Of a DNA stretch of 64,000 bases, positions 5,771 to 53,675 are shown in pieces. The DNA lies in contig NIVC01000121.1 of the NCBI GenBank assembly GCA_002269645.1, positions 472,293 to 536,292 on the forward strand, given 5' to 3'. Both the position numbers and the translations under genes were made by a program. The notes below the pieces were generated by a model, which was not told the DNA's origin, ran no database searches, and worked only from the letters and a program-made list of their open reading frames with translations. Position 1 is the first letter of the stretch, and the number at the start of each line of letters is the position of its first letter. The DNA is from Macrostomum lignano (taxonomy: Eukaryota).

Positions 5771-5779
5771 GGCCCTCAC

Positions 5780-12013: not shown

Positions 12014-12027
12014 GTTGCTATGGTAGA
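12014..12027 (+). promoter_or_regulatory. RFX X-box-like motif upstream of lectin copy 1
   Basis: GTTGCTATGGTAGA, 2 mismatches to GTHNYYATRRNAAC, about 100 bp before the ATG at 12126. Confidence 0.45.
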
Positions 12028-12125
12028 TAATGGGACTAAACAATGCATATAATAAATGCATTGATCAGCTGCATCTAGCTAGAAGCAATTTTATTACTAA
12101 AAAGTTCCATCAACACAAATCAAGG

Positions 12126-13572
12126 ATGCCAATCTCCAAAAGAATCGGTTCTCAGCTTCTGGGCTTCATCACAGCTATCGTTTCTTCTGCTCTGGTGAGC
12201 AGCGCGGCCAGATTCGAGCTGCAGCTCGGTGCCGCAGTCAACCGAACTCTCCCAGTCGCGTTTGAAGTCGCGCACAGCTTCAACCAGCGTCACTGCTCTC
12301 AGCTGTGCTCACAAATAGCCGAGTGCTTCGGATTCTACCAGATGAAAAAAGGAAAATTGTGCGGCCTGTTTAACGCTTCTCAATTCTACCGGAAGAACTT
12401 GTGGACAAGTTCGGAGACACCGCTTGACATATTTGTGATTGACGCTTGTAAGTCCTTGTTATTCAACTCTATTGAACTTTTATAATCTTAAAAACACGCA
12501 CTTTGTCTTTAAGCGCGATTCTCCGACCGAGATTCTCCCACCGAAATTCTCCTGCCGAGATTCTCCCATCGAAATTCTCCCATCGAGATTCTCCCATCGA
12601 GATTCTCTCACAACGATTATCCCCTCGAAATTCATCCATTGAGATTCTCCCACAAAGATTATCCCATCGTGATTCTTCCACCGAGATTCTCCCATCGAGA
12701 TTCTCCCAAAAAGATTATCCCCTTGAGATTCTCCCAAAAAGATTATCCCATCGAGATTCTCCCAAAAAGACAATCCCACCGAGATTCTCCCACCGATATT
12801 CTCCCACCGAGATTCTCCCACCGAAAATCTCCCATTAAGATTCTCTCACCAAGAACAACCCTCCTGCAGGAAACCCTCCTGTGGGAAACTCTGGTTCTCC
12901 CGAATCAGTGTTTGGAGTAACATCCTTAGCTCATTAGAGTACAATCAATACTTACTTTAGCATGTGTTTGATTCAAAAGCTATTAGAATACCAGATAGGA
13001 AAGTAAACGAATATTCTCGCCGGTGAGGGGGGGTCTGTAGCTTGAGCAGCAGTGTATCTGACAAAACGCTCGTAAAAGTTTATTAGTTTTATGAAGTTTT
13101 ATAATTAAATGATTTTGCCCACTTTAAACGCAAGATGCTGCTGTATTCTACATTTGCAGACAGCAGCTCGAAGACACAGAAGCTGAGCATATCAGGCTGC
13201 TCTCAGAGTTCAGTCGGTAGCGAGGGCGTCTGCACCAGAGCCATCGACGGCAACAAGAACCCAATGTTTCACGATGGTTCATGCAGTCATACTGACACAA
13301 TCCCGAACCAGTGGTGGGAAGCCCAGCTTTTCCGACAGTCCATTGTTTCCCACGTAGTCATCTACAACAGACAGGATTGCTGCTCAGAGCGGTTGAACAA
13401 CTTTGAGCTGCTTGTGGACGGCGTTCAGTGCCGCAGCGTCAGCGTGTCGGTGCCGTTCTCTGTTGGCAACTTCACCTGCCAGATGGCCGGATCCAGGATT
13501 CGAGTCCAGAGTCGCCGTAGCAATGTTGTCACGCTGTGCGAGTTCGAGGCATACGGGATTTACTTCCCTTGA
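12126..13572 (+). CDS. Secreted PAN/apple + F-type lectin (fucolectin/FTP) protein, copy 1 (244 aa)
   Basis: Exons 12126-12447 (signal peptide; C-x3-C-x5-C-FGFY...C-x-LF PAN core; T|GTAAGT) and 13160-13572 (TTGCAG|). The join is phase 1 and in frame. Canonical motif H-x26-R-x-D-x4-R (SHT...NRQDCCSER); C-terminal TLCEFEAYG. Confidence 0.9.
12515..12870. repeat. Degenerate GAGATTCTCCC-based tandem repeat in the intron of lectin copy 1
   Basis: GAGATTCTCCC/GATTATCCC recurs with short variable spacers. Confidence 0.85.
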
Positions 13573-13749
13573 CTGGTTGAGTGATTCGGTGAGTGTGTTC
13601 AGTGGTGACGTCCTGTTTAATAGATAAAATTGAATTGTTGCATTAAAAAAGCAAAAAATTGCAAGAATTTAAAATAAAACGGATAATACATGAGTATAAT
13701 TTTAGCGATTGACTGTACGTACAGAGGCAACATTATGTACATCAGATCT

Positions 13750-13980
13750 CCAAGGACTACTCAAGTAACATAGGACGCAACACTTGAAATCTATGGTAAA
13801 TGTTTTGAAGGCAACTTTTCGCGAAAAATTACACTACAGAGATAGAAGGTTTTAATTTTTTTCAGCACAAAAATTGTTATTTCTTTTGATAGGAGGCAGA
13901 TCCAGTGTTCATCTTTTGATATGTTGTGCCTTTCTTATTGCTCTATCGATATTCATAAAGCTTTTTGTTCAGAAATAGTT
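13750..13980. mobile_element. One arm of a long-TIR MITE family (also at 27033-27270; complete copy at 56712-57260)
   Basis: Shares TTTTGATAGGAGGCAGATCCAGTGTTCATCTTTTGATATG and its flanks with the other copies. Confidence 0.75.
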
Positions 13981-14390
13981 TTTAATGCAGGTTTCAACGG
14001 GAAAATACACTACGGAGATAGGAAATTTCACGATTTTCAACACTAAAACAGTGATTGGGTCTCTTAACAGTGTCAGAGAAAATTCTAATCACACTTATTT
14101 TGTGCCTCACATGCTGCTCTAACGATGCATTTAATCGATTTTTCATGTTAAATTGGTCTGTCACTTGAAAAAAACGTTTAAAATAACGACAAGATTCAAT
14201 ATGTTCAATATTGACTTCTCTGAGATCAGGACACTTAGAGACACTTAATATCCATAATATTTTATCTAAGTACTTGTACGCTGATACCAATGAAAATAAA
14301 ATGTGTTTTCTGAAATCATCAAATATACTCGTATGTTATAGCTTCAAGTTGTCAGTAGTTTAAAGCTTTCACGGGTGTCACTTTTTTATA

Positions 14391-15703: not shown

Positions 15704-20217
<4,514 letters not shown>

Positions 20218-25385: not shown

Positions 25386-26408
25386 TCAAGGAAGGTAATT
25401 CCCGTATGCCTCGAACTCGCACAGCGTGAGAGAGTTGCTATGACGACTCTGGACTCGAATGCTGGATCCGGCCATCTGGCAGGTGAAGTTGCCAACAAAG
25501 AACGGCACCGACACGTTGACGCTGCGGCATTGGACGCCGTCCACAAGCAGCTCAAAGTTGTTCAACCGCTCTGCACAGCAATCCTGTCTGTTGTAGATGA
25601 CTACGTGAGAAACAATGGACTGCCGCAGAAGCTGGGCCTCCCACCACTGGTTCGGGATTCTTTTAGTATGACTGCATGAACCATCGTGATACAATTGGCT
25701 CGTGTTGTTATCGATGGCTCTGGTGCAGACGCCGCCGTGATTTAGAGAACTCTGAGTGCAGTTTGTCCAGCTCAGCTTCTTTTTGTCAGCAAAAGGCAAG
25801 ACATTCAGTGTTTAGAGAGCAAGATAGCACGTGAGCCTGCAAATCTAACATGTCTTGACATGTCTGTCTAGTGAACAAGGGAGATACTTAAGCAGAAGCA
25901 CAGCTAGTACAGCAGAAAGTGTATATACACGCAATTCGTTGAGGTATTTATTTACACACTATTTATTTATTTATTTATTTATTATTTACAATTGACTAGT
26001 TGGACTTTTCGACTGTTGAGCTGTAAGTAAAGAGCACACACTAGCAATGCTTTACAAGTGAGAACAAGCTGACTTACCGAAATCAATCACAAAGATGTCA
26101 AACTGCTGCTCCGATCCGTCGGCTGTCCACGAGCTCTTCCAGTAGAAGGCGGTCGCGTTGAACAGTCCGCAGGGTCCCGCCTTGTTCTGCATCGAGTAGA
26201 ATCCGAAGCACTCGGCTATTTGTGAGCACAGCTGAGAGCAGTGACGCTGGTCGAAGCTGTGCGCGACTTCAAACGCGACTGGGTGAGTTCGGTTGACTGC
26301 GGCACCGAGCTGCAGCTCGAATCTGGCCGCGCTGCTCATCAGAGAAGAAGAAACGATAGCTGTGATGAGGCTCAGAAGCTGAGCAGCAGCTCTCAATGAA
26401 GACTGCAT
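25386..26408 (-). CDS. PAN + F-type lectin copy 2; splice acceptor mutated (TG instead of AG), possible pseudogene
   Basis: PAN exon 26408-26078 (G|GTAAGT). FTP exon 25786-25386 has an intact H-x26-RQDCCAER motif, but it is preceded by CCTTTTGCTG where paralogues have TTTTTGCAG or TTTTACAG. Confidence 0.8.
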
Positions 26409-26521
26409 TTCCTACACAGTGATATACGAGGCATGCAGCTTAGCCACGTAGGCGCGCGTAGGTTTGCATCCGGCAGTTTTATACATTCTGATGTATTTGC
26501 AGACCTTTTTTTCAAAGTTTT

Positions 26522-26535
26522 TTTACCATAGCAAC
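26522..26535 (-). promoter_or_regulatory. RFX X-box-like motif upstream of lectin copy 2
   Basis: GTTGCTATGGTAAA on the minus strand, 1 mismatch to consensus, 114 bp before the ATG. Confidence 0.55.
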
Positions 26536-27028: not shown

Positions 27029-27032
27029 CTCA

Positions 27033-27270: not shown

Positions 27271-27399
27271 TTATTGGCCTAAATTGGTCTTATTGAAAAA
27301 AAACGTTTAAAATAATGGATATTATTAGGATGAATGTCCTTGAATATTCATATAAGTATAATTGATTACACCAGCCCTAATAGGCAAATGTGCAACCGA

Positions 27400-28090: not shown

Positions 28091-30052
28091 TATCAACATA
28101 GGTCAATCTGCTAATTAATATACGCCTTCATCTGCCTTCGTCTACTTCTGAGTTGCACGTCTAATGGAATTTCATCGCGTTCACAAAAATACAGTAAAAT
28201 GTATGGACTTTATGGCTTTTGAAGAACTTGAAGATTGATTTAGCGATAGATTCACCTGCTGATAGTGCCTGCGGCTTCGTGGTGATGACTGAATGCTTGA
28301 GATATTAGTTAAGTATCCTCAGAAGTTAAGGCTTAGTCATACGACATTCAGTTGTAGCCTGCTGCGATGAAGCTGAAAAAATAAAAACTGACTACATGTA
28401 CTTTTATTGAATCACCTTCCTGCTTTCGTCAAACATGTAATTCTGAATGTTTTCTACTTCTAATTCAATAATTTATACACAGTTTAACAGCAAGTTTTAA
28501 ATTAAGCAACCATTAAGTTTTCCTGACAATTTCAAATACTCGTACATTAAAATATTTGAATCATCATTCGATATTAGAAATTACTTAAACTAACTTTGGT
28601 AGCTTCTGAGCGGCATCTTTATCAGTGGACTACTGATGTGTTCCTTACTACGCTCGTACCAAGAGTTTCTTAGTAATCAAGGAACAATCACTTCTAACTA
28701 CTGCTGCAACCCAGTAATCAAGTGAAGGTATCTATTACCTTGAGTCCTGATCAGTAGAGCTCTTCCGGTACATGTAGTTCTCGATCTCAATCAGTTTAGA
28801 CTTCTTGATTTAGTAGTTCTGGTCCAAGTTCCTATTGTACTTCCAACGAAGTCGTTTCCGGCCAGTATCTGCAGTTAGGACCAATCAGAAGCTTCTGGTC
28901 AACAATGGGGATCCCTGCGCCGCGCTGCGGTTTCAAATAAGCCTTCCCCTTCTAGCAGTGTCTTAATGCACTCTAGGTATAGCTCCGGAAATCACTGATA
29001 GTCTTCTTATGGCTATCGGGGTAAGTCCTTCTGGAGACTATAACCAATGGAGTCTCAAAAAGACTCAGTCACAACAATAATATCGATTCGACTCAAACAC
29101 CTGGCGCAAATTAGTAAGGCTTACCACAAGAGCTCAGCCGAGTCTCGGTTGACTTGGTCTAAAGGAAGTCTGGCTTCCTCTTCGGAGCTCTTCTTCCCTC
29201 TGGAAGGTTCTCTGTTTTTCAGTTGTTGCTCCGGTCCGCTTCAAATCACTTGTTTTTATAGGCAACTTTTGCGAAATATACATAGCAGTATGATTCATCT
29301 TTTCGGTTGTAAATAATATGACTCTTCTTTACGTTTAAATAGTAACTTGACTTACGGTTTAAGTTTTGCTTCGTATGTTTGCATTAGTCTACTTACAGTA
29401 GCATTCTATGGATAAACTTCTACATTAACAATTTTATGATTTTTGTGGGACGTTGAACATTCTACACAACTTCTTGCAGATTGTATTCGCGTGGCTGATA
29501 TCCGTAGCGTCAACCACATCGTCAATAACTATAACCAATCGCTCTCCGACTTCACCTAAGACAAACTACATGTACCAGTTTCATTTGGAACTTGTAAGTT
29601 CAAACGGGGACATGCAGTCTAGCAAGCGTCTCACTACCTCTGCAGGTTCTTCACTCTTGATCAACTCTCAGAGGCATCTAACAATTCTGCTCAACTGTAA
29701 CTTGGGTCAAAATGATCAAACAAAGAGGCGCGTGTCAAAAATCGGCTACCAAACTTGAAAAAAAATCTTGCTTACCGACACAACACAGTCCACATTTCTT
29801 ATATCTAGAAGAACAGCTCAGAAAACGCAAACAGCTACGCCTTCAAGGTATATAAAAAGGATAGCTATGTGTGTCCTTTGTTTGTCAACGGAAGCAATGT
29901 CAACAGTAAAAACTCAAACTGAACAGTTAAAACACGTTGGAAACACTTTGGCATGTTTGCGCATGGGTGCTACGGTAAGGCGTTAAAAGCATATGAGAAG
30001 CTTGTTCAAACTACCGGATGCAAGATAACTGTGTCTGCAAAGCTTGTATGTC

Positions 30053-30383
30053 ATGCGATTTTCAACGACAGCTTTTTCTCAGCTTCTGAGCCTCATCACA
30101 GCTATCATTTCTTCTGCTCTGGTGAGCAGCGCGGCCAGATTCGAGCTGCAGCTGGGTGCCGCAATCAACCGAACTCTCCCAGTCGCGTTTGAAGTCGCGC
30201 ACAGCTTCAACCAGCGTCACTGCTCTCAGCTGTGCTCACAAATAGCCGAGTGCTTCGGATTCTACTCGGTGCAGAACAAGGCGGGACCCTGCAGACTGTT
30301 CAACGCGACAGCCTTCTACTGGAAGAGCTCGTGGACAGTCGCCGTGTCCGAGCAGCAGTTTGAACTCTTCGTGATTGATGTCG
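30053..30383 (+). CDS. PAN exon of lectin copy 3 (orphan first exon; no dedicated FTP exon)
   Basis: ATG at 30053, signal peptide, PAN core and donor G|GTAAGT. The intron matches copy 4 up to 30565 and is then replaced by a SINE. Confidence 0.8.
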
Positions 30384-31530: not shown

Positions 31531-32618
31531 AATAAATTAAGACGCTTACTGTATGTCACGCATAGCACGTGTAACTTCATGCACATATCCAAACTAATGG
31601 GATAATAAAACAGCTTATTTAAAACAGCTTAACAGTTTCAATAATAAAACAGCCATTTTACTCGTAAAACTTTATTGACTTGCTGATGGTATTTCTCCAT
31701 GCTTCACTGAGAGATAGTCTGGCCTGCTTCCCAACGCATCAATGAGTGACTGCTTGAAGTCGAAGGTTTTCGAAAAGTCCAAATGTCGCTGATGGATCGG
31801 TGGAAGAACGTCTTCATTTCACAGAGGTCCGGTCAGTACCCAGCAGTAGCTTAGCTGCTTATGACACTCGTTAGTACTCAGAACTCCTGGAAAACGTATA
31901 ATTGGTTCAAGACACATATCAGCAATTTCACAAAATAAGACTTCGACTGCGGTTGCAAGACCTTTCAGAAGAAGATGGAGGATGGAGATGGAGAAGAAGA
32001 AGAGATATTTGTCAGAGTTTGTATGACCGGAAACGGTAAGGAAATTCTCCCTGCAAATTAGCATGAGATAACGAAAAACCGCAATATCTTTTTTTTCCAA
32101 TTTCTTTTTTCTAAGAAAGTATAGCACGCTCTTACAACTTCTTCTCTTTTTATGACCTAGACCAAGATAAATTGCTAAAGCTGACTTTCGTATACTGGAT
32201 ATTGGGAAAACATTTCTCAGGAATGGGCTTTTGTGCACACGGGACACTGTATTGCATAGGTTAGCTCGGACTATAGGGCTCACTGTTATAATACTTGCCA
32301 AAAACGTGACTTTGGACGACTCTCGTACTCGTGAAATGCATGCTAAAAACTAGAATGCAGTTTATTGGTCAGGCTGTGCATCATGGATGTAGGAGAAGAA
32401 GCCCTCTTCAGAGGAAAGGCAAAATGGCTGGGCCTTCTCAGAAAAAAGCTGAGTTGGGGTCCTGCTTGGCAAAGAGGAAAACAGCAACAGGTTTTGCGTG
32501 ACTCAAAATACTTAATTATTGAGGAGCCATATGACTATGGTGAATAAAACAAAGGTCTACAATAAAACGCAACTAAGCTGCCCCGTCTCCCTCTACTCCT
32601 AGTGTGACTGTGAAGGCA

Positions 32619-33599
32619 ATGCGCTTTTCAATGAAAGCCTCTGCTCAGCTTCTGAGCCTCATCATAACTATCGCTTCTTCTGCTCAGGTGAGCAGCGCGG
32701 CCAGATTCGAGCTGCAGCTGGGTGCCGCAATCAACCGAACTCTCCCAGTCGCGTTTGAAGTCGCGCACAGCTTCAACCAGCGTCACTGCTCTCAGCTGTG
32801 CTCACAAATAGCCGAGTGCTTCGGATTCTACTCGGTGCAGAACAAGGCGGGACCCTGCAGACTGTTCAACGCGACAGCCTTCTACTGGAAGAGCTCGTGG
32901 ACAGTCGCCGTGTCCGAGCAGCAGTTTGAACTCTTCGTGATTGATGTCGGTAAGTGTCGGCTTGTGCTCATTACTAGATGAAAAACTTGTAGTGGTAAGA
33001 GCATGGACCTCAGCCCCTCAGCAGCGTAAGCGTTTGTCTTCAACGGGCACAGAACTTGTTAATAAAATCCACTTCATCCGTTGCGCTGTTTAGAAGTCCA
33101 ATGCTTTGCTTGGGTCTTGGCCTTGTTTGCTAGGGACGAAATATGTATGTGTCAATCAGTGGCGCACTCTTAGATTTATACATTTACTCTTTTTACAGAC
33201 AAGAAAAAGTTGAGCTTGACGAGCTGCACTCAGAGTTCCCTTGGTTTCGGCGGCGTCTGCACCAGAGCCATCGATGGCAACACGAACCAAGCGTGGAGGT
33301 CTGGTTCATGCAGTCATACTGGCGAAATCCCGAACCAGTGGTGGGAGGCCCAGCTTCTGCGGCAGTCCATTGTTTCTCACGTAGTCATCTACAACAGGCA
33401 GGATTGCTGTGCAGAGCGGTTGAACAACTTTGAGCTGCTTGTGGACGGCGTCCAGTGCCGCAGTGTCAGCGTGTCGGTGCCGTTCTCTGTTGGCAACTTC
33501 ACCTGCCAGATGGCCGGATCCAGGATTCGAGTTCAGAGTCACCGTAGCGATGCTCTCACGCTGTGCGAGTTCGAGGCCTATGGGATTTACTTTCCTTGA
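32619..33599 (+). CDS. Secreted PAN + F-type lectin, copy 4 (243 aa)
   Basis: Exons 32619-32949 and 33199-33599; GT-AG, phase 1, open frame; canonical H-x26-RQDCCAER. Confidence 0.92.
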
Positions 33600-34892: not shown

Positions 34893-34901
34893 CTGGTTTT
34901 T

Positions 34902-37168: not shown

Positions 37169-37182
37169 GTTGCTATGGTAAA
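37169..37182 (+). promoter_or_regulatory. RFX X-box-like motif upstream of lectin copy 5
   Basis: GTTGCTATGGTAAA, 1 mismatch, about 100 bp before the ATG at 37283. Confidence 0.55.
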
Positions 37183-37282: not shown

Positions 37283-38333
37283 ATGCAGTCTTCAATGAGA
37301 GCCTCTGCTCAGCTTCTGAGCCTCATCACAGCTATCGTTTCTTCTGCTCTGGTGAGCAGCGCGGCCAGATTCGAGCTCGGTGCCGCAATCAACCGAACTC
37401 TCCCAGTCGCGTTTGAAGTCGCGCACAGCTTCAACCAGCGTCACTGCTCTCAGCTGTGCTCACAAATAGCCGAGTGCTTCGGATTCTACTCGGTGCAGAA
37501 CAAGGCGGGACCCTGCGGACTGTTCAACGCGACCGCCTTCTACTGGAAGAGCTCGTGGACATCCGCCGGATCGGAGGAGCAGTTTGACGTCTTCGTGGTT
37601 GATGTCGGTAAGTGTCGGCTCGTGCTCATCACTAGCCTACATGCAAAACAAACCTAGGTGTAGTGGTAAGAGCATAGAGCTCAGCCTCTCAGTACCATGG
37701 TAACGTAAGCGTTTTTCTTCAACTTAACGGTTATTGCGTCGCAAAAACTACTTCAGCAGTTGCGCTGTTTTGAAGTCCAACTACAAGAACAAGAAAATGG
37801 CAACGGAACAACATGTGCCAAGAAAACTCTTCCTGTTTTGCTTGGGTCTTGGCCTTGTTTGCTAGGCACGAAATATGTATGTGTCAATTGGTGCAGCGTT
37901 CCTAAATTTATATACATGCTGTCTTTTTGCAGACAAAAAGAAGCTGAGCTTGACAAGCTGTTCTCAGAGTTCCCTTGGTTACCGCGGCGTCTGCACCAGA
38001 GCCATCGATGGCAACACGAACCAAGCGTGGAGGTCTCGTTCATGCAGCCATACTAAAAGAATCCCGAACCAGTGGTGGGAGGCCCAGCTTCTGCGGCAGT
38101 CCATTGTTTCTCACGTAGTCATCTACAACAGACAGGATTGCTGTGCAGAGCGGTTGAACAACTTTGAGCTGCTTGTGGACGGCGTCCAGTGCCGCAGTGT
38201 CAGCGTGTCGGTGCCGTTCTCTGTTGGAAACTTCACCTGCCAGATGGCCGGATCCAGGATTCGAGTCCAGAGTCGTCGTAGCGATGCTCTCACGCTGTGC
38301 GAGTTCGAGGCATACGGGAATTACCTTCCTTGA
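37283..38333 (+). CDS. Secreted PAN + F-type lectin, copy 5 (241 aa)
   Basis: Exons 37283-37607 and 37933-38333; phase 1; 2-codon deletion (RFELGA vs RFELQLGA); canonical fucose motif. Confidence 0.92.
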
Positions 38334-39968: not shown

Positions 39969-41831
<1,863 letters not shown>

Positions 41832-42934: not shown

Positions 42935-44766
42935 TCAAGGAAAATAGATGCCGAACGCTTCAAACTCGCAAATGCAAAGCGCATCGTTCAGGTTATTCTC
43001 AATCCGAATTCTGCTGCCAGCGCCCAGCCAGGAGAAGTTGCCAACTGAGAATGGTGTCGATCGGCTTACCTGGGCGCATACGGCATCGTTCACCAACAAG
43101 GAGAAGTTGTTAAGCCGCTCGACACAGCAATCCTGGCGGTTGTACAGGACCACGTGCGTGACAATTGACGGTTGAAGCAATTCAGCCTCCCACCATTGAT
43201 TGGGAAATTGGTCCGTGTGCGTGCAGGATCCTGCAGAATAACTTGGATTATTGTTTCCATCAATAGCTCGACTACAAACTCCAGAGTATAGCACTGAGCT
43301 CTGACTGCAGTTGGAGATGGAGAGCTGCCGTACTGTCCAGTCTGAAATAATTGATATTCCGGGATAGTTAGAAATCTTCCTGATCTGACAATCTGCTAGC
43401 TACTACTTCCAGTAGCATAACAATCCAGAAATAAGCAAACATTTTTGGGCTATTTTCTGCTCGGACATGGCTCATCATGGTGCCATCAAGACACGCACCA
43501 GGGTCAACCTTGTCTAGAGGGTTACAAGTATATCCAGCTATGTCATTATGTGAATAGATAATCAAGAGCTACACTATTACTGTATATGCGAATACGTGCG
43601 ACTGCTTCCCATGCTTGGACATTCTGTTTCTCAAACTTAGCAGATCTTGTCTCTGTGCCATTCTTAGCAGATCTTCTCAATCTGCTCGGTTCTTGCAGGA
43701 TCTTCTAAGATGGGAGGTACATTTTTTCGTTATTCATTTGGCTAAAGTGTTCTAACTGAACTATATTTTATTTTATGACAAAATAGGACAATAAATAAAA
43801 AAATATGCGATTCGAAGCTATAAAAGGATATAAAAGCTAAGATCTTGTACGATGTAGCAAGTCGCCCAGACCTGGTAAGTTTACCTAAGTATTATTATAG
43901 CAAAGATCTTGCACGTTCTTGCAAGTACTTGCGCAGCAACCCAAGAAGATAGACAAGATCTGCTAAGAATCAACAAGTCAATGTCTTCTAGGGGATCTGT
44001 GCACATTTCTGTCTCCCATCCCCCTTGCCATTAATAATCCTTATTGCTGAAATGAGCCTGATAAAACGTCTATAAAACAAACGCTATACTGTTTCAGCAC
44101 TGGCCACCGCGAAACAAATGGAAAGAGCCCATGCAGTACTGCTTTATATATAATTAATAGAGATAGTTTTTCAGCTCCTACTGTTAGATAGGGGATACTG
44201 GACAGATAGGGGATTGAGGAAAAAGCTACAAAAACAAATTTAAAAAGCTCTTGCGTCTCTGCGGAAAAGACATGCTAGCTATGCATGCACATTGAACCTT
44301 GAGACTCTTGTGTGTCTATTTTAAATTCCTTATAAGGGCCACTCTAAGCACACTTCAGGCAACCGCAACAACCTTTTGTGATCATATAATGCGATCATCA
44401 CATGGTGTACCTCTGGCAATCATGCAGGTTTAAAGAAGCTGATTGATACTTACTGCCATCAATCACGAAGACGTCAAACTGCTGCTCCGATCCGGCGGAT
44501 GTCCACGAGCTCTTCCAGTAGAAGGCGGTCGCGTTGAACAGTCCGCAGGGTCCCGCCTTGTTCTGCACCGAGTAGAATCCGAAGCACTCGGCTATTTGAG
44601 AGCACAGCTAAGAGCAGTGACGCTGGTTGAAGCTTTGAGCGACTTCAAACGCGACTGGGAGAGTTCGCTTGACTGCGTCACCGAGCTGCAGCTCGAATCT
44701 GGCCGCGCTGCTCACCAGAGCAGAAGACATGAGCACTGCCGATAGGAAGCTGAGAATCCGGCTCAT
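42935..44766 (-). pseudogene. PAN + F-type lectin copy 6: PAN exon has a premature TAG; FTP exon is intact but the most divergent
   Basis: PAN exon 44766-44454 reads ...CACTGCTCT TAG CTGTGC (paralogues have CAG) at 44610-44608; donor A|GTAAGT. FTP exon 43341-42935 (TTTCAG|) is open with H-x26-RQDCCVER. Confidence 0.8.
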
Positions 44767-44903
44767 TGCTAGGTTACAATTAGAAGTTTGAAACGGAGCT
44801 ATTGACTTGCAGGCCACAGCGAATTATTCTATTTTTTCAGTTTATCGCATCCGTATATCAGACAACATTTATCCGTTTTGGGATGTACGCAAATCTCTTT
44901 TCG

Positions 44904-44917
44904 CTACCATGGAAACT
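44904..44917 (-). promoter_or_regulatory. RFX X-box-like motif upstream of lectin copy 6
   Basis: GTTTCCATGGTAGC on the minus strand, 1 mismatch, 138 bp before the ATG. Confidence 0.55.
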
Positions 44918-46020: not shown

Positions 46021-46639
46021 GGTTTCAAATTTTAAGTCGCGTCTTGATAAGCGGCCAGCTCAGCTAGGTCGAGAGACATTCCAAAAATTTTTTTCTCATT
46101 TCTGGACTGCATGCATGCTACTGGGAGTAGAACCTTTGCAGATTTTGAGATCAGGACGACTGCAACTATTCTGGAATATCATTGCAAGTATTTGACAATT
46201 TGCAGTCAAGCCATCGATGAAAACAAATGTTTCTATTTGTTTAAGTTTTCTAAATCGAAAGTGCACTGCTGGATAAAAAGCACAAGCGATATTAGTGATA
46301 AACAGGAATATTGGCAACATCAGCAACTCGTTTGCTAGGAGCTAAATCCTTTTTCAATTCGGATTGGAAATGTGTATTCTTCGGAAACAGAAAAGGTTTT
46401 CTGCACACAAAATGTGTCAAACATTTTTCAGAAAAAGTTCCAATTTGTCGAAATGGTGGAATTACGAAGTACTTATATCAATAATTGCCTACTCGGAATG
46501 TCAACTACTCGTAGTTCAGCTCAGCGAAAAGTTTGATTACTTAATTAAAGTTTAGCTCAAAGTCTGAATTCGTATCGTAATCGATCATTGCCTTGTCACT
46601 TACTCGCTCATTAACACACTCACTGAATCACTCAACCAG

Positions 46640-49600
46640 TCAAGGAAGGTAATTCCCGTATGCCTCGAACTCGCACAGCGTGAGAGCATCGCTACGGCGA
46701 CTCTGGACTCGAATGCTGGATCCGGCCATCTGGCAGGTGAAGTTGCCAACAGAGAATGGCACCGACACGTTGACACTGCGGCACTGGACGCCGTCCACAA
46801 GCAGCTCAAAGTTGCTCAACCGATGTGAGGCGTTCTGCCTGTTGTAGATGACTACGTGAGAAACAATGGACTGCCGCAGAAGCTGGGCCTCCCACCACTG
46901 GTTCGGGATTCCTCCTTCAGTATGGGTGCATGAGCCAGAGCTCCATGCTTGGTTGGTGTTGTTATCGATAGCTCTGGTGCAGACGCCGCCGAAAGCAACG
47001 GAACTCTGGGTGCAGCTCGTCAAGCTCAGCTTCTGCTCGTCTGTAAAAGAATGGCATCATATACATTTTAGAGCACTGCACCGATTACATATTTCATGCC
47101 TAGCCAACCCTAACGAGCCAGTTGCATCCGAAGCGCCTAGCACTGTAAGGGCGCTACGTGAGAAGCTTCAGAGCCTAGGGCTTTCAACACAAGGCAGAAA
47201 ATGTGAACTTTTAATGCGGCTGAGGGCGCACCTCGAGGGCATCGCCTCCGATCTTGAGAATGCAGACGACGAGGACGAGGAGCAAGATGAAGCTGCCACA
47301 GTGACGACGCGTGAAAGAAGAAACGGCGCTACGGCGGAGAGGCAACTGCCTTTTATCGCGAACGAGTCGGTACAACATGGTCAAGAGTCTGACGCGGCTG
47401 GCGGCCTGGACGACGAGCTGGTGGAGGCTGAGAAGCAGCTCCGACTGCTAAAGCTACGCAAGGAGGCCGCTCTGCTTCAGGCGGAAGTCAGCCAACTTCA
47501 GCGAAGGCCTGCGACGTCAAAGAATCCCGGTGAGTTGCTCATTAACCTGTGGTCCGACGATGAAGATGCTGCCCAGCAAGAGCCCAGTCGGTCTGTAGGC
47601 AAGGTGTACCGAATCCCTGAGTTTATTAACAAGCGAAAGCAGCAGGAGGCAGGAGTGACTCAGTCCATTGACAAATCAGGGAGAGTCACCTTCAGAGTGA
47701 AGGAAGCTGTTGTTGACTCGCTGACGTTTGGAGACTGGATCTCGGCGAATGCTCGAATCATGCTGAAGTTGCTGGATGATGGCAGGTTGGTGAAGAGCGG
47801 GCTGGGCGGCCAGCCTGATGTGTCAGAGTTGCGAGACTACCTGCGTTACACTGCGCGCATTGGCGAGCTGTTTGACCTCGGGTTCGACAAGGCTCGAGTC
47901 ATGAGGTTTGATGACGAGTGCAGACTGAGTGAAGATGGTGAGACGTCATGGGAGTCGCGCGGATCTGACCTTGGCCGAGTTGCCACCTATCTGATGGCCC
48001 CACAGAGTGCACCGACTGCCAGAGTTGACCGGGGGCCAAGACAAAGCCTGCAGCCACCCTGCTTTGATTTCAACAAGGAATCTGGATGCTCAAGGCGGAA
48101 CTGCCGTTTCGCTCATCGGTGCCGGCGTTGTGGACTTGGCCACTCAGCGGCGATGGCGCACAGGGATGACGGTGCTGAGGTCAGCAGGCCTCTGCATTGA
48201 CTGCGCGTTGATCCTGTTTTAACTTCCTCTGTTTTATCAACTGACCTAAAGCTGGAGGCATGGATGGAAGAGTTGGAGTCGATTGATCTGCCGCTGGACA
48301 GAAAGCAGTTTATTCTTGATGGGTGTGTCTGAGGGATTTCGGATTACGAATGTGCAGCGAGAAAACCTGAAGTCTGTCGAGGTCAGCAACTACGAGTCTG
48401 TGAATCTTTACGCTGAAGCTGTTCAAATGCAAATTCTGAGAGAAATTCGCCTTGACCGCTACCGTCGGTGCTCGGATGGGTGGCGGCCTCGGATTGTGAG
48501 TGCGCTGGGTGCCCTGCCGAAGGATGACGGTCGGGTACGCCTAATTCACGATTGCAGTCGGCCGGACAATCTGTCGGTGAACGCGCACTGGGAGAGCAAT
48601 GAAAAGTTGCGGTTTTCAAGCGCTGAAAACTTCGCAAGGAAGTTAACGAGAGGCTGCTACATTACTAAAGTTGACCTGAGTGAAGCATACCGCGCATGTG
48701 GAGTGCACCCAGGAGACTTCGTCAACACCGGCCTCAAGTTCAAATTTCCTGGCTGCGCCACTCCCACCTACATGTTTGATACGCGACTGCCGTTCGGGGC
48801 GGCAGCCTCGGTCACGTGCTTCCAACGCCTGAGCAATGCGATTCATCTGATGATGGTGCGTAGAGGCTTCATCAACACCGAGTCTTACCTGGACGACTTT
48901 GCCTACTGCGGGACGCAGGAGAACTGCCAGCGCTTCTACGTCGATCTTATTGACTTGCTGACTCGGCTGGGCTTCACCGTCAATCCGGCCAAGTGCCAGC
49001 TGCCGGCGCAGCGGATGTCATTCCTTGGAATTGAGTTCGACACTGTGGAAGGAATCAAGAAGCTGCCGGATGAGAAGGCAAGGAAGTTGATCAACCTGCT
49101 TGGTGTCGAGTCAGCCAAGGTGAGGCTTAGTCAGCGGGCCCTCCAACAGGTCATTGGCAAGTTGGGGTGGGCAGCGCAGGTCATCAGTTGCGGAAGGACC
49201 TTCTTGCGTGAGCTGATTGAGCGGTGCAACATCTTACGGCGTGGACAGCGAACGCTGGTCGACTCCGGGTTACGCAGTCAGCTGAACTGGTGGAAGGTGG
49301 CGTTGCAGGCGTGCCGATGGGTGCAGCTGTGGCCGAGCTACGATCGAGTTGTGGCGATGGAATCCGATGCGTGCGGCAGAGGTGGTGCGGCGCTGCTGCG
49401 TGACCAGGATGGTCTGGTTGACTGGTGCTACCTGGACTGGGAGAAGGATGCAGGATCTGTCTTCGCTGACCTGCCGATCAACTACAAGGAAGCGTTGGCC
49501 CCTCTGCTGGCAGTGATGAGGTGGAGGGATGTGCTCAAAGGTTGCAAGGTGAGCATCTACTGTGACAACCAGACGGCCTGTCACATCATCAACAAAGGCG

Positions 49601-52600
49601 TTTCAAAGTGTCCTGCGTTGCAGCGGCTGCTGCAGACTGTGGCTCTGATGTGTTTGCGTTTTGGAATGAGCATTCGCGCGTTTCATGTGCCTGGTGATTT
49701 TCAAATTTTTGCTGACGCTGCCTCGCGGTTGCACGAGCGAGGCCAGCTGTTAAACTTTTTACTCCGCTGTTATGGTTTTATTTGTCCTAGCATTCTACAA
49801 TCACTGCATCAGCATGCTTTTGGCTTGGCGACCGCCTCCTTTCTTCATTTTCAGGCCGCCCAGCTGCGTCAGACTCTCTTAGCAGCCGCGCTACATCGCT
49901 GCTGAGCGCTGCGTACGCACCGCGGTCGGCGCAGGCAGTCAACAGACACATCCGTGAGTGGCAGGAGTTCTGCCGCCATACCGGCTGCGATCCAGTGTCC
50001 TGCAACGTCACGAGCCTGCTGAACTATTTGGCCAGTCTGATCGGCACACGGCTACATGCCTACAGCAGCATCTCGGCAGTCTGCAGCTCTCTGTCGCTCT
50101 GGTTTCGAATAAACTCGTCGCCGGACCTGACTAAGCACGCTTCAGCGGTTCTTCTCCTACGCGGCGCTAAACGGGTCCTCGGACTGCGCGTGAACCGAAA
50201 GCGGCCTGTGTCACCTACAATGCTGACAGAGATGCGACGACTAGTTGACGAGACCGACAGGCTGCAGCTGGCCTGCTGGGCTGCGACCATCTGCTGCTGG
50301 TGGGGAATGTTGCGAAAGTCCAGCTTTCTGCCACGAACTGGCAAAGGCCCGGCCCTTTCCCGGCGCGCCGACCTGCTTCAGCATCCGAAGGGTCTGGTGT
50401 TGCGCTGCGAGTTCGGCAAGACCATCCAGTTTAAGGAGCGCAGTCACCGGGTACTGCTGCCGAGATTGGCGCGGCAGCCAGCCCTGTGCCCTGTGAGCGC
50501 AGTCGAGTGACACATCCGCGCCAACGGGTTGAAGTCAGCAGAGTCACCGCTCTGGTCCTACGCCGACAGAAGTGGCGGCTTGCGCCTGCTGACTGGGAGG
50601 CACCTGGACTGCTTCCTCCGTGACAAGTTTGCCGCAGCCGGCGTTCGACCAGGATCTTACTCCGCGCACAGTCTGCGACGAGGAGGAGCTACCTGGGCGT
50701 CTGTGCTAGGCCTCCCAGTGTCTGATATCATGCGCATTGGTGACTGGAGAAGTGAGGCTGTGCAGCGTTATCTCCCCCAGTTTCACCAGGCAGCGGAGGC
50801 TGCTGTGACTTTTGCCGGTGGTGTCTCTGCTTTGTTTTAGCTCCTCGCCTTCTGCTTTTGTTCGCTTGCTTGCTTTGGGTTTGGAGGTCGCTTTTTCGCT
50901 GTGCGCCTCCCGCGCGTTGCTCGCCTTGCTCGCCAATTGTCTCTGTGTCTCTTTGTGTCCGGGCTGGTCACTAAACGAGACCCTAGCTTATAGAGTTTTA
51001 TGGCCAAGTGTTTGAGTGAAGGACAACTTAATCACTCAGAAGACTCGCAATTAATTGTGAACAAAGTTTGAGGCTCGTTTAAAAGCATTCTTCTATGGCC
51101 AAGCCTAAGATAAGGCTAACCACGAATGTAGCATGCAACATGTACCACAGACACAAACTATCACTGACTACAAGGTAGAAACTATCCAAGTAATGTTTTT
51201 TCGAGGATTAAGTTATTAATAGCTGGCCTCTAGCGTCTGTAGTTTCCCGTCCCAAGTATAGCTTTTTGCAATTGAATTCCGCCAAACTGCAAAACCTTTC
51301 AGCCAATGGAGATTTTTCCTTCACTTCGGTGGCTTCTACCATAGACTATTTAGGACACACCGGCTAGCTTTCCCGCTCCTGTAAATGATTTCAGCCAAAC
51401 TGAAAAACCTTTCAGCCAAGACTTTCAGTCAGTGCTTTTCTCACGCAGCTAACCGGTGTGTCCTAAATAGTCTATGGTAGAAACAGCTGAAGTGAAGGCA
51501 AAATCTCCATTGGCTGAAAGGTTTTACAATTTGGCTGAATTCAATCGCAAAAAGCTATATTGAATACTCCATGGTTTGAGTTGACTATGGAAGGTAAGTC
51601 ATTAGACAACTTAATTTATCATGCTGTTATGGAACCACGGGCCAGTAGACAAGGTACGACTTGAGCTTGTATTTACAGAAAGAGCTTTCATTTACATAAA
51701 AACAGGGCATTAATGAATTATATTTTTAAGTCAAATTGAAAGCATCAAAATTTACAAAATTTCAACACTTTACGATAACTGATGTCGCTGCAAACACAAT
51801 CCAAACAATCGGTTGGAGCGCATCTCCAGCCAGCGCAATTGTTAGCAGTGATTGCCCTGCCAACAGGTTCGGTGACGCCTCTCTCTCGAATAACATGAAT
51901 CTCAACTGCTCAAGTGTCACTCCTTTTACTGAAACTTGCTCATCCTCAGCCAATTCGCTTCTGTCCCGATAGTACTCTTGGAGTTACAGTGAAAATTAGG
52001 CCCATTCATAAAAATTACCCAGTTTCCGTTAGTGGCCAGTTGATGGCAGCGATCTGCTGGGTGATCTAAAAATGCCTAAAACCTGTTCTGCGTTTTGCCA
52101 CCTCTCTGGATGGCAGAATGCACCAACCCAAATTCCGACGAACTTGCCATGCAAACCGTAACGAAAGGACCCTCTGGGTTGTCACTGTGCGCTTTAATGA
52201 AGAGAAAAAAGAGAAGAGATGCCGAACTTTTCTGGAGAGAAGCAATGGTCAGAGCGTTTGACAATTGCCGTTTCTTAGTTGGCGAAATATACTTTGTGTA
52301 CCTCAAGACTACTCGGTCTTTAATGACCATCAATACATTGGATGTCGCCGATCGCATTACCTCGGTTCAATAGATTCATGACAACAGTGTTAACACAGAC
52401 GCAATGATTTGTGTACTTGCGTGATGGATTCACCCTCCTAGAAATCCGAGCCATCATGCCATGCCGTTCAGGTGATATTACCTAGAACTTGCGTTGTACT
52501 TTACCACTGCTCCAAAGAGAATTTTGCTTCACGAGACGAGACAACAAGCTTAAATAATGGCGCACCGCAGCTAAAGGCATACAATCTTAATCTGCTTTCC

Positions 52601-53551
52601 GGTGCATAGGTTGTTACCGTTGGTTTACTTCTCTTTACCTGACATGACCAAGTGGACGCAGTCCGTTCCAACCTTCTCGGAAAAGACAATAGCGTCCTTC
52701 ATCATCTGGTGGAGCCACTCACGCCCTCTAAATCCAGAATGCGTACATAACGTGCAGAAAACTTCGTCGTGTAGTTTCACAGGCGTAGTTCAATCATAAT
52801 ACGCTCCGAGCTTCATAGCAACCTCTTCAGTGATTGCCTGAAAAAGCCGCTCAGCTTACCAATGCATCTGTTTCGTTTCACAGACGCGATAAGAGCAGCT
52901 TTATAGGTTTTTTCAAACTTCTGAAATACGACATTGACAATCACTTCCTAATTCCTCACTTCTTTGAAGTGACGGTGTAGACTGGTAAGAAAGCCGTCTG
53001 CTCTAGGCAAGGATGCAAACCACATGCGCATATACTCTATAAGTTACCTGTGCGGCATGCTGTCAATACAATCAGGAAGATTCTCCGAGCGTAAAAATGT
53101 CATCTGTGGGCAATTCTCATAGATCCTTGGCGTTTACTACCCGGGCACTCAAGTACTGTGCCCGTTGAAGACAATTGCATACGCTACTGAGGGGCTGAGA
53201 TCCATTTAGGTCAGTGATGAGCACGAGCCGACACTTACCGACATCAACCAGGAAGACGTCAAACTGCTCGTCCGATCCGGCGGCTTTCCACGAGCTCTTC
53301 CAGTAGAAGGCGGTCGCGTTAAACAGTCCGCAGGGTCCCGCCTTGTTCTGCACCGAGTAGAATCCGAAGCACTCGGCTATTTGTGAGCACAGCTGAGAGC
53401 AGTGACGCTGGTTGAAGCTGTGCGCGACTTCAAACGCGACTGGGAGAGTTCGGTTGACTGCGGCACCGAGCTGCAGCTCGAATCTGGCCGCGCTGCTCAC
53501 CAGAGCAGAAGACATGAGCACTGCCGATAGGAAGCTGAGAATCCGACTCAT
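46640..53551 (-). CDS. Secreted PAN + F-type lectin, copy 7 (237 aa), with a 6.2-kb intron and an altered sugar-binding motif
   Basis: Exons 53551-53239 (G|GTAAGT) and 47040-46640 (TTTTACAG|); phase 1; in frame. Both intron ends (47041-47105 and 53150-53238) are homologous to the short introns of copies 4 and 5. The motif reads H-x27-RQNASHR. Confidence 0.85.
47106..48200 (+). CDS. Gag-like ORF1 of the YR retrotransposon (SAP domain + Cys/His finger), 5' end truncated or non-ATG
   Basis: TVRALREKLQSLGLSTQGRKCELLMRL fits the SAP pattern; C-terminal CCCH/CCHC-like finger. Confidence 0.75.
   Translation, partial: NPNEPVASEAPSTVRALREKLQSLGLSTQGRKCELLMRLRAHLEGIASDLENADDEDEEQDEAATVTTRERRNGATAERQLPFIANESVQHGQESDAAGGLDDELVEAEKQLRLLKLRKEAALLQAEVSQLQRRPATSKNPGELLINLWSDDEDAAQQEPSRSVGKVYRIPEFINKRKQQEAGVTQSIDKSGRVTFRVKEAVVDSLTFGDWISANARIMLKLLDDGRLVKSGLGGQPDVSELRDYLRYTARIGELFDLGFDKARVMRFDDECRLSEDGETSWESRGSDLGRVATYLMAPQSAPTARVDRGPRQSLQPPCFDFNKESGCSRRNCRFAHRCRRCGLGHSAAMAHRDDGAEVSRPLH
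48201..49905 (+). CDS. Reverse transcriptase-RNase H ORF of the YR retrotransposon (one +1 frameshift near 48321)
   Basis: The N-terminal STDLKLEAWMEEL...FILDG is in the gag frame; VSEGFRI onward is in the +1 frame. Catalytic motifs are intact. Confidence 0.88.
49863..50840 (+). CDS. Tyrosine recombinase ORF (overlaps the RT ORF end; one in-frame TGA at 50508)
   Basis: AAYAPRS...WQEFC...LLNYLA N-terminal part; catalytic R, K, HxxR, W and Y all present; the two supplied ORFs are in the same frame, 18 nt apart. Confidence 0.88.
51257..51559. mobile_element. MITE of about 300 bp with ~110-bp TIRs, flanked by TA
   Basis: TA|TAGCTTTTTGCAATTGAATTC...CCATAGACTATTTAGGACACACCGG is mirrored by CCGGTGTGTCCTAAATAGTCTATGG...GAATTCAATCGCAAAAAGCTA|TA. 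Confidence 0.85.
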
Positions 53552-53661
53552 TGCTAGGTTACAATTAGAATTTTGAGGCAGCTATTGACTTGCAGATGAG
53601 AACGAATTCTGTTTTGCAGTTTTCTCACATGCGTATATCAGACAACATTTATCCGTTTTTC

Positions 53662-53675
53662 GTTACCATGGAAAC
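53662..53675. promoter_or_regulatory. Perfect RFX X-box upstream of lectin copy 7
   Basis: GTTACCATGGAAAC is a full match to GTHNYYATRRNAAC in both orientations, 111 bp before the ATG at 53551. Confidence 0.65.

What the first reader, a model, noticed from the sequence alone, without database searches (positions are those of the whole stretch)
12014..53675. An RFX X-box sits 75-150 bp upstream of every lectin start codon: a lectin family wired to the ciliogenesis programme?
Motifs relative to the X-box consensus GTHNYYATRRNAAC: copy 7 GTTACCATGGAAAC (53662, perfect); copy 6 GTTTCCATGGTAGC (44904, 1 mismatch); copies 2 and 5 GTTGCTATGGTAAA (26522, 37169; 1 mismatch); copy 1 GTTGCTATGGTAGA (12014; 2); copy 3 GGTGCTACGGTAAG (29966; 3); copy 4 ATGACTATGGTGAA (32531; 4). 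The motif persists although the flanks of copies 1, 2/5 and 6/7 are otherwise poorly alignable. Copy 5 also has AGTACCATGGTAAC in its intron (37691). RFX/DAF-19 X-boxes at this distance mark genes of ciliated cells. Inference: these lectins are made by multiciliated epidermis or ciliated sensory cells, for example as a surface mucus or chemosensory glycan-sensing layer.
Basis: partly seen in the sequence, partly recalled or inferred. Interest (0 to 1): 0.85.

Follow-up and report, generated by a model that had tools for sequence, protein, structure and literature searches.

The report
Conserved X-box-like motif before flatworm lectin genes
A cluster of seven secreted fucose-lectin gene copies in the flatworm Macrostomum lignano carries, about 90-150 bases before each start codon, a short palindromic DNA motif that has survived while the rest of the promoters diverged beyond recognition; in five copies it looks like a binding site for RFX, the regulator of cilia genes, but nothing here shows where the lectins are expressed.

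Summary
The window is Macrostomum lignano. Each gene has two exons: a signal peptide plus Cys-rich module, then an F-type lectin domain.

There are three promoter types: c1, c2-c5 and c6/c7. Their flanks are statistically unalignable, yet they share CGTTnCnATGGTA, the best-shared k-mer in an unbiased search (P about 0.003 against genomic triplets; none of 3000 shuffles).

I scored the sites with a matrix built from 30 validated C. elegans X-boxes:
- **c7:** the top site in 64 kb, identical to the xbx-1 X-box.
- **c6, c2, c5:** borderline.
- **c1:** weak.
- **c3, c4:** at noise level.

So "every lectin" is really five of seven.

The conservation is asymmetric. The 3' AAC, the most informative X-box positions, is kept only in c7. 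That fits one good RFX half-site or a different factor.

Several copies are damaged: c6 nonsense, c2 acceptor lost, c3 exon 1 only.

RFX binding is plausible, and a planarian Rfx orthologue is tied to cilia gene modules. The ciliogenesis link itself is untested. I rate this a credible new candidate RFX target family of moderate interest, not a demonstrated new circuit.

The parts
12014..12027 (+). c1 X-box-like motif GTTGCTATGGTAGA. It has a perfect left half-site GTTGCT and a poor right half. An extra half-site AGCAAC abuts it at 12008-12013.
   Evidence: 9.5 bits; P=0.015 per 100 nt
26522..26535 (-). c2 X-box-like motif GTTGCTATGGTAAA
   Evidence: (13.8 bits)
29966..29979 (+). c3 degenerate relic GGTGCTACGGTAAG, aligned with the c2/c5 motif but not a credible X-box
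   Evidence: 0.3 bits; P=0.25
32531..32544 (+). c4 degenerate relic ATGACTATGGTGAA
   Evidence: -0.7 bits; P=0.33
37169..37182 (+). c5 X-box-like motif GTTGCTATGGTAAA
   Evidence: (13.8 bits)
44903..44916 (-). c6 X-box GTTTCCATGGTAGC. On the other strand it reads GCTACC AT GGAAAC; both halves occur in validated nematode X-boxes (osm-1, xbx-6).
   Evidence: 15.5 bits
53662..53675 (-). c7 perfect X-box GTTTCCATGGTAAC, identical to the validated C. elegans xbx-1 X-box
   Evidence: 21.1 bits, best site in the window
12048..12055 (+). c1 TATA-like element TATAATAA, 21 nt after the motif and 78 nt before the ATG. The inferred core promoter is not demonstrated.
26476..26483 (-). c2 TATA-like element TATAAAAC. 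Related A-rich/AAACT elements lie at 37213-37220 in c5, 44839-44846 in c6 and 53615-53626 in c7.
12126..13572 (+). c1 gene: exon 1 12126-12447, exon 2 13160-13572; intact 244-aa ORF
25386..26408 (-). c2 gene: exon 1 26408-26078, exon 2 25786-25386. The intron acceptor AG is mutated to TG, so this is a probable pseudogene.
30053..30383 (+). c3: exon 1 only, with no exon 2. It is 97.7% identical to c4 for 513 nt starting at the ATG.
32619..33599 (+). c4 gene: exon 1 32619-32949, exon 2 33199-33599; intact 243-aa ORF
37283..38333 (+). c5 gene: exon 1 37283-37607, exon 2 37933-38333; intact 241-aa ORF
42935..44766 (-). c6 gene: exon 1 44766-44454 with nonsense codon TAG at 44610-44608 (Q53*); a strongly diverged exon 2 at about 43330-42935
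46640..53551 (-). c7 gene: exon 1 53551-53239, exon 2 47040-46640. Its 6.2-kb intron holds reverse-transcriptase ORFs. The lectin motif RQDCCAERL is changed to RQN-ASHRL.
37691..37704 (+). c5 intronic X-box-like site AGTACCATGGTAAC, created by a c5-specific 8-nt insertion and not conserved in paralogous introns

Best explanation
The motif is a functional proximal-promoter element of a tandemly duplicated, partly decaying family of secreted PAN-like + F-type lectin genes in Macrostomum lignano.

The most likely mechanism is binding by an RFX-type winged-helix factor. It would bind as a dimer on the full palindromes of c7 and c6. On c1, c2 and c5 it would bind mainly through the one perfect GTTRCY half-site.

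The site lies 20-60 nt upstream of a TATA-like/AAACT element. That places it roughly 60-100 nt upstream of the inferred transcription start. From there it would switch the genes on in RFX-expressing cells. In flatworms those are most plausibly ciliated cell types (epidermis, sensory neurons, protonephridia).

Shown here:
- the sites and their positions;
- their statistical excess;
- their survival in three otherwise unrelated promoter types;
- their decay in c3 and c4.

Inferred, not shown:
- RFX binding;
- the transcription start;
- the expressing cell type.
For: - The motif is the best-shared k-mer among all seven 400-nt upstream regions, found with no prior motif model.
- The three promoter types are unalignable apart from it: flank z-scores are below 2.3 against motif identity of 10-13 of 14. 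blastn homology between types begins only inside exon 1.
- In the triplet test on c5, c1 and c7, the shared 12-mer has a total distance of 2. P is about 0.003 against random genomic triplets and 0 of 3000 shuffles reach it.
- Within c2-c5 the longest run of invariant columns lies inside the motif.
- PWM from validated X-boxes: c7 is the best site in 64 kb and equals the xbx-1 X-box. c6, c2 and c5 are among the top 6 distinct sites, against 0.5-0.8 expected in random sequence.
- The differences between promoter types at positions 4 (G/T) and 6 (T/C) fall on degenerate positions of the consensus.
- c1, c2, c5 and c7 each keep a perfect GTTRCY monomer site. That is the RFX monomer recognition sequence conserved from fungi to animals (PMC10530576).
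- The distance to the ATG matches validated nematode and fly X-boxes.
- A planarian Rfx orthologue is linked to cilia modules with RFX-motif-rich promoters (PMC12660999).
- In an acoel, fucolectin-6 marks cells of the heavily ciliated epithelium (PMC8097308).
Against: - Only c7 scores inside the bulk of validated nematode X-boxes. c6, c2 and c5 sit at the lower edge, c1 scores below all but one of the 30 validated sites, and c3 and c4 are noise.
- Column conservation does not follow RFX information content. Positions 13 and 14 are A in 30/30 and C in 29/30 validated sites, yet they are the most variable here. The uninformative position 11 is invariant T.
- One intact gene (c4) has lost the motif. 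The two best sites belong to copies with lesions: c6 has a nonsense codon and c7 an altered sugar-binding loop.
- An X-box by itself is not predictive of RFX dependence. Even among the 25 tested fly genes with an X-box conserved between two species and matching a restricted consensus, only 16 were RFX targets (PMC2375033).
- 38.8% of M. lignano genes are trans-spliced, so sequence near the ATG need not be the promoter (PMC5730564).
- There are no expression, TSS or binding data.
- No forkhead, CRE or other co-motif enrichment was found.
Confidence: 0.5

Rival explanations
1. The element is functional but is read by a different, unidentified transcription factor. That factor's site would be the asymmetric core CGTTGCTATGGTA, and the resemblance to an X-box would be partial and coincidental for promoter types 1 and 2.
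For: - The conserved block is asymmetric. The 5' (C)GTT, the central ATGG and the T at position 11 are kept. The 3' AAC, which is nearly invariant in validated X-boxes, is kept only in c7.
- c1, c2 and c5 score below nearly all validated sites.
Against: - c6 and c7 carry full X-boxes. c7 is identical to a validated one, at the same promoter position.
- The substitutions between promoter types fall on X-box-degenerate positions.
- The kept half, GTTGCT, is a perfect RFX monomer site.
- I could not name any alternative factor with this specificity.
Confidence: 0.2
2. The element is a true RFX site, but the lectins are not part of a ciliated-cell programme. RFX would drive them in a non-ciliary context such as immune or secretory cells or the testis. 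This would fit fast-evolving secreted F-type lectins acting in defence or reproduction.
For: - RFX factors have non-ciliary targets. DAF-19 regulates antimicrobial genes in the C. elegans intestine (PMC3591283).
- RFX2 is a major regulator of spermiogenesis (PMC4498915; only the title and abstract snippet were seen).
- The family shows tandem duplication, pseudogenes, gene conversion and high dN/dS (0.4-2 in exon 1, 0.25-0.8 in exon 2). That is typical of immune or reproductive proteins.
- From my own knowledge, not checked here: F-type lectins act as immune recognition molecules in fish and molluscs, and as oyster sperm bindin.
Against: - In the only flatworm data I found, Rfx is tied to cilia modules.
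- In C. elegans the immune genes regulated by DAF-19 lack recognisable X-boxes.
- There are no expression data either way.
Confidence: 0.2
3. The motif is not functional. It would be a slowly decaying relic of the ancestral promoter, or a chance similarity picked from many possible transcription-factor motifs.
For: - c3 and c4 show that the motif can decay.
- Several copies carrying it are pseudogenes.
- The degenerate consensus alone is hardly enriched in the window.
Against: - There is a 13/13 identity between c1 and c2/c5 in flanks that are otherwise at random-level similarity.
- Significance in the triplet test.
- Per-promoter PWM probabilities of 0.015, 0.003 and <0.0004 in three independent promoter types. 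These multiply to about 1e-8, which survives correction for several hundred candidate motifs.
Confidence: 0.08

Closest known systems
C. elegans DAF-19 X-box target promoters (xbx genes, IFT and BBS genes)
   Same: Both have a 14-bp imperfect palindrome GTHNYY AT RRNAAC about 60-200 nt upstream of the ATG in compact promoters of an organism with trans-splicing. c7 is identical to the xbx-1 X-box, and the two halves of c6 occur in the osm-1 and xbx-6 X-boxes.
   Different: The genes here encode secreted lectins, not ciliary structural or transport proteins. Most copies keep only one good half-site. The invariant AC at positions 13-14 is lost in five of seven copies. RFX dependence is untested.
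Drosophila dRFX targets defined by X-boxes conserved between D. melanogaster and D. pseudoobscura (Laurencon et al. 2007, PMC2375033)
   Same: The logic is the same: conservation of an X-box at 56-146 nt from the ATG inside otherwise diverged promoter sequence is the predictor, not mere presence. The + strand reading of c7, GTTACC AT GGAAAC, equals the D. pseudoobscura GA21369 X-box.
   Different: The conservation here is between paralogues within one genome, not between orthologues of two species. Even among the 25 tested fly genes (X-box conserved between the two species and matching a restricted consensus), only 16 proved to be RFX targets.
Planarian (Schmidtea mediterranea) Rfx-cilia gene modules (PMC12660999)
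   Same: Same phylum. An Rfx orthologue is connected to modules of cilia genes whose promoters are enriched for the RFX motif.
   Different: That paper, as far as I read it, does not report lectins among those modules. Macrostomum is a distant, early-branching flatworm lineage.
F-type lectins (fucolectins): FBP32 of striped bass (PDB 3cqo), Anguilla anguilla agglutinin (1k12)
   Same: Exon 2 encodes an F-type lectin domain: Pfam F5_F8_type_C_2 at 8e-13 and FBP32 at 2e-31. The His and two Arg of the fucose-binding motif are conserved.
   Different: The domain is preceded by a private Cys-rich N-terminal module that may be PAN-like. Pfam PAN_2 hits only c1 at E=0.07, and the AlphaFold model is unreliable there. 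Three F-type lectin genes of a ctenophore and a crinoid have no proximal X-box.

Membership tests
RFX X-box promoter element | Sequence within the score range of experimentally validated X-boxes (14-bp palindrome GTHNYY AT RRNAAC) | tested here: inconclusive
   PWM from 30 validated C. elegans sites; leave-one-out scores are mostly 15.7-22.4 bits. c7 scores 21.1 (inside). c6 at 15.5 and c2/c5 at 13.8 are at the lower edge. c1 at 9.5 is below. c3 at 0.3 and c4 at -0.7 are noise.
RFX X-box promoter element | At least one intact RFX monomer half-site GTTRCY | tested here: met
   GTTGCT in c1, c2 and c5. GTTACC (reverse strand) in c7. c6 has GCTACC, as in the validated osm-1 site. c3 and c4 have none inside the motif.
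RFX X-box promoter element | Position roughly 50-250 nt upstream of the start codon | tested here: met
   87-150 nt in all seven copies. Validated sites are mostly -60 to -200 and 56-146.
RFX X-box promoter element | Motif conserved where surrounding promoter sequence is not | tested here: met
   The comparison is between paralogous promoters only; no orthologous species were available.
RFX X-box promoter element | Per-position constraint mirrors RFX binding specificity | tested here: not met
   Positions 13 and 14 are the most variable and position 11 is invariant. Spearman correlation with RFX information content is -0.18 to -0.32, not significant.
RFX X-box promoter element | Bound by an RFX protein; expression depends on RFX and on the motif | not testable with these tools
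   Needs EMSA, DAP-seq or ChIP, rfx RNAi, and mutated promoter-reporter transgenes.
Ciliogenic (RFX/FoxJ1) regulon | Expression in ciliated cells, co-expressed with rfx and/or foxJ1 | not testable with these tools
   No M. lignano expression data were reachable. Forkhead core motifs in the seven 400-nt upstream regions number 5, against 1.7 expected; this is not compelling.
F-type lectin (FTP / fucolectin) domain | Sequence membership in the domain family | tested here: met
   Pfam PF22633 at 8.2e-13 and PF00754 at 1.1e-9. PDB FBP32 at 2.2e-31, fucolectin-related protein, and eel agglutinin 1k12.
F-type lectin (FTP / fucolectin) domain | Fucose-binding motif His ... Arg-x-Asp-x4-Arg/Lys with vicinal cysteines | tested here: met
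   H148, R175 and R182 are invariant or nearly so in the alignments. RQDCCAER is present in c1, c2, c4 and c5. c7 has RQN-ASHR, having lost the Asp and the Cys-Cys.
PAN/apple domain (exon 1 module) | Sequence or fold match | tested here: inconclusive
   PAN_2 at E=0.071 in c1 only. AlphaFold pLDDT is below 50 over residues 1-109.

The most novel reading that the evidence does not exclude
In Macrostomum, RFX has recruited a whole battery of secreted fucose-binding lectins. The ciliogenic regulator would then specify not only the cilium but also an extracellular glycan-binding coat or mucus layer made by the same ciliated cells. The X-box would be either retained or independently re-acquired in three unrelated promoter types while gene conversion homogenises exon 1.
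Probability: 0.25. Interest if true: 0.55.

Novelty: new member of a known kind. Interest (0 to 1): 0.35.

Why it matters
If the motif is a working RFX site, these lectins would be an example of the RFX regulon reaching beyond ciliary structural genes to secreted effector proteins in a flatworm. They would also give a compact, well-defined promoter for cell-type-specific transgenes: a 14-bp switch within about 150 bp of the ATG, in a species where transgenesis works (PMC5730564).

The locus is also a neat natural experiment. Three promoter types share nothing but this element. Two copies have lost it. Several copies are pseudogenes.

It does not open a long-standing question. The RFX/X-box logic is well known, and the ciliary link remains untested.

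Tried and rejected
1. **More M. lignano DNA or transcripts.** I therefore had no orthologous promoters, no TSS and no expression data.
2. **Literature.** Searches for Macrostomum plus lectin, fucolectin or X-box, and for F-type lectins in flatworms, found nothing on this family. The adhesive-gland paper does not involve F-type lectins. Chu et al. 2010 does not cover flatworms.
3. **Strict IUPAC consensus counting.** It is too degenerate to be informative, so I replaced it with a PWM from validated sites.
4. **Global MAFFT of the seven upstream regions.** It misaligned the c6/c7 motif, so I replaced it with motif-anchored and pairwise tests.
5. **Co-motifs.** Forkhead cores number 5 against 1.7 expected. 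No CRE is present. CCAAT is at background. I rejected these as evidence.
6. **A general X-box/F-lectin link across animals.** Three F-type lectin genes of Bolinopsis and Antedon have no site of at least 9 bits within 1 kb upstream. I rejected the idea on this small sample.
7. **The intronic c5 site as supporting evidence.** It is a c5-specific insertion.
8. **Fold of the N-terminal module.** AlphaFold confidence was too low to search with.
9. **Rfam.** No RNA families were found in the window.
10. **Transposable-element origin of the motif.** The promoter segments match only their own paralogues in the self-blast.
Full report
**What the locus is**

The window is eukaryotic. A protein search with the spliced copy-5 product returned FTP-domain proteins of the flatworm Macrostomum lignano as best hits. 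UniProt A0A1I8J772 (P0001) reproduces copy 7's exon 2 residue for residue, except for its last residues after ...ALTLC, and then follows copy 6 with its nonsense-bearing segment skipped. It is therefore a fused gene model of this very locus, and the window is M. lignano.

tblastn maps seven exon-1 copies and six exon-2 copies. Each gene has two exons joined by a phase-1 GTAAGT...YAG intron.
- Exon 1 encodes a signal peptide plus a Cys-rich module. It gives only a weak PAN_2 hit in c1 (E=0.07). The AlphaFold model is unreliable there (pLDDT below 50).
- Exon 2 encodes an F-type lectin domain. Pfam F5_F8_type_C_2 scores 8e-13. PDB hits are FBP32 at 2e-31 and eel agglutinin. The His/Arg/Arg fucose-binding residues are conserved.

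Condition of the copies:
- c1, c4 and c5 are intact.
- c2 has its intron acceptor AG changed to TG.
- c3 is exon 1 only.
- c6 has a CAG-to-TAG nonsense codon at codon 53.
- c7 has lost the Asp and the Cys-Cys of the sugar-binding loop, and carries a 6.2-kb intron with reverse-transcriptase ORFs.

**Checking the observation**

Copy 6 begins at 44903. In gene orientation they start 87-150 nt before the start codons.

The IUPAC consensus alone is weak evidence. There is one perfect lectin site, and at up to 1 mismatch there are 16 strand-hits against 10.4 expected.

I therefore built a position weight matrix from the 30 validated 14-bp C. elegans X-boxes in Table 1 of Chu et al. (PMC3245922) and scanned both strands.

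| Copy | Score (bits) | Chance of an equal or better hit in a random 100-nt stretch |
|---|---|---|
| c7 | 21.1 | <0.0004 |
| c6 | 15.5 | 0.003 |
| c2, c5 | 13.8 | 0.003 |
| c1 | 9.5 | 0.015 |
| c3 | 0.3 | 0.25 |
| c4 | -0.7 | 0.33 |

- c7 (GTTTCCATGGTAAC) is the single best site among 128,000 positions. It is identical to the validated xbx-1 X-box.
- Validated sites score mostly 15.7-22.4 bits in leave-one-out. So c7 is a textbook X-box, c6, c2 and c5 are borderline, c1 is weak, and c3 and c4 are not sites.
- "Every lectin start codon" should read "five of seven".

**Is the motif conserved more than its surroundings?**

Yes, and this is the strongest result.
- A self-blast shows that homology between copies begins only inside exon 1 for c1 against the rest, and for c6/c7 against c1-c5. 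It begins at the ATG for the 97.7%-identical c3/c4 pair.
- There are three promoter types: P1 (c1), P2 (c2-c5) and P3 (c6, c7). Motif-anchored pairwise alignments of the flanks give z-scores below 2.3 between types. Within types they are 4-9 among c2, c3 and c5 (lower for pairs involving c4) and above 22 for c6/c7. Motif identity between types is 10-13 of 14.
- A search for the best-shared k-mer, with no motif prior, returns CGTTGCTATGGTA at the top.
- For one representative of each type, the shared 12-mer has a total distance of 2. This is matched by 0.3% of random genomic triplets from the window and by none of 3000 shuffles.
- Within P2 the longest run of invariant columns lies in the motif.
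- Synonymous divergence of exon 1 is low (dS 0.03-0.4). Exon 2 of c6 is saturated against all others, although its exon 1 is only 0.06 from c7. Exon 1 is therefore being homogenised by gene conversion, and the promoters are much older than the exons suggest. A 13-nt conversion tract is not a credible alternative.

**Is it an RFX site?**

For:
- c7 and c6 are full X-boxes built from validated halves.
- c1, c2, c5 and c7 each keep a perfect GTTRCY. This is the RFX monomer site conserved from fungi to animals (PMC10530576).
- The P1/P2 versus P3 differences at positions 4 and 6 fall on degenerate consensus positions.
- The distance to the ATG matches nematode and fly X-boxes.
- A TATA-like/AAACT element follows 21-57 nt downstream, at -70 to -80 from the ATG. 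That would put the motif about 60-100 nt upstream of an inferred start site.

Against:
- The column-by-column conservation does not follow RFX information content. Positions 13 (A in 30/30 validated sites) and 14 (C in 29/30) are the most variable here. Position 11 is uninformative for RFX but invariant T here.
- The constraint looks like one half-site plus ATGGTA. That is compatible with half-site RFX binding, but also with another factor.
- The intact gene c4 has lost the motif. The two best sites belong to copies with lesions.

**Is it wired to ciliogenesis?**

This could not be tested. I found no expression, TSS or binding data for these genes.

Context from the literature:
- In an acoel, fucolectin-6 marks cells of the ciliated epithelium (PMC8097308).
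- In flies an X-box alone is not predictive. Even among the 25 tested genes with an X-box conserved between two species and matching a restricted consensus, only 16 were RFX targets (PMC2375033).
- RFX has non-ciliary roles, for example innate immunity in C. elegans (PMC3591283).
- 38.8% of M. lignano genes are trans-spliced (PMC5730564). Several copies have a pyrimidine tract plus AG just before the ATG, so the mRNA 5' end may be an SL acceptor. The same is true of nematode X-box genes.
- Forkhead, CRE and CCAAT co-motifs are not enriched.
- Three F-type lectin genes of a ctenophore and a crinoid have no proximal X-box, so any link is lineage-specific.

**Verdict**

The element is very probably functional (about 0.8 by my estimate) and is more likely than not an RFX site (about 0.5-0.55).

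Expression in ciliated cells is a reasonable but untested guess (about 0.3).

The finding is a new candidate member of a well-known kind of regulatory arrangement. It is readily testable in a species with transgenesis and is of moderate interest.

Noticed in passing
window 30053-30565 vs 32619-33131; 44454-44766 vs 53239-53551; 42935-43330: Exon 1 evolves in concert. c3 and c4 are 97.7% identical for 513 nt starting exactly at the ATG, while their promoters differ. c6 exon 1 is dS 0.06 from c7, but c6 exon 2 is saturated (dS above 3) against every other copy. Gene conversion seems to stop at or near the start codon.
   Followed up: partly
window 44608-44610; 25787-25788; 30383 onward; 46640-47040: The cluster is decaying. 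c6 has a TAG nonsense codon at codon 53. In c2 the intron acceptor AG is TG. c3 lacks exon 2; a dispersed repeat follows at 30564-30818. c7 has RQDCCAERL changed to RQN-ASHRL.
   Followed up: yes
window 42935-47040 (- strand): UniProt A0A1I8J772 (M. lignano 'FTP domain-containing protein') is a chimeric gene model. It joins c7 exon 2 to c6 exon 1 and c6 exon 2, skipping the part of c6 exon 1 that holds the stop codon.
   Followed up: yes
window 59214-59262: A tandem pair of X-box-like motifs, GTCACCAAAGTGAC and GTCACCAAAGTAAC (9.0 and 13.2 bits), is followed directly by TATAAAT and TTGTTCAAACT. That 11-mer is also present in the c3 promoter. This may be another promoter of similar build; no lectin exon follows.
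   Followed up: partly
window 54640-54653 and 53882-53895: Further X-box-like sites lie upstream of c7: ATTTCTATGGTAAC (15.5 bits, 1.1 kb upstream) and CTTTCCATGGTAAA (7.2 bits). This may be a homotypic cluster.
   Followed up: no
window 12008-12019: In c1 the motif's left half-site is abutted by an inverted half-site, giving a perfect 12-nt palindrome AGCAAC|GTTGCT. The arrangement is everted, unlike a normal X-box.
   Followed up: no
window 46866-49905 (+): The c7 intron carries retroelement ORFs: RVT_1 and RNase H in 48283-49905, and a SAP-domain ORF at 46866-48200. The start of the SAP-domain ORF overlaps c7 exon 2 on the opposite strand.
   Followed up: partly
window 13751-13982 and 27033-27272: A dispersed repeat (91% identical) lies downstream of c1 and 0.6-0.9 kb upstream of c2. 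Each copy carries GTTTTGAAGGCAAC (9 bits).
   Followed up: no
window 61600-62059 (+): Two ORF fragments match the tRNA wybutosine methyltransferase TYW3 (Pfam 3e-15 and 1e-6), probably exons of a TYW3 gene.
   Followed up: partly
window 7786-8367 (-): This ORF has immunoglobulin (Ig_3 / I-set) domain matches.
   Followed up: no
window 1-1096, 2577-3486, 4492-5771, 17913-19028, 21334-22760, 41455-41837, 12517-12854: There are many long tandem arrays: 31-mer, 24-mer, ACAG, TCTA, 17-mer and ACT repeats. They include a 14-nt array inside the c1 intron and account for the multi-frame 'ORFs' in the mechanical ORF list.
   Followed up: partly
window 37255-37282, 26409-26430, 32590-32605, 53552-53570: A pyrimidine-rich tract ending in AG lies just before the start codons, for example tctccctctctgtgtag|GAAATG in c5. 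It looks like a splice acceptor, possibly for the spliced leader.
   Followed up: no
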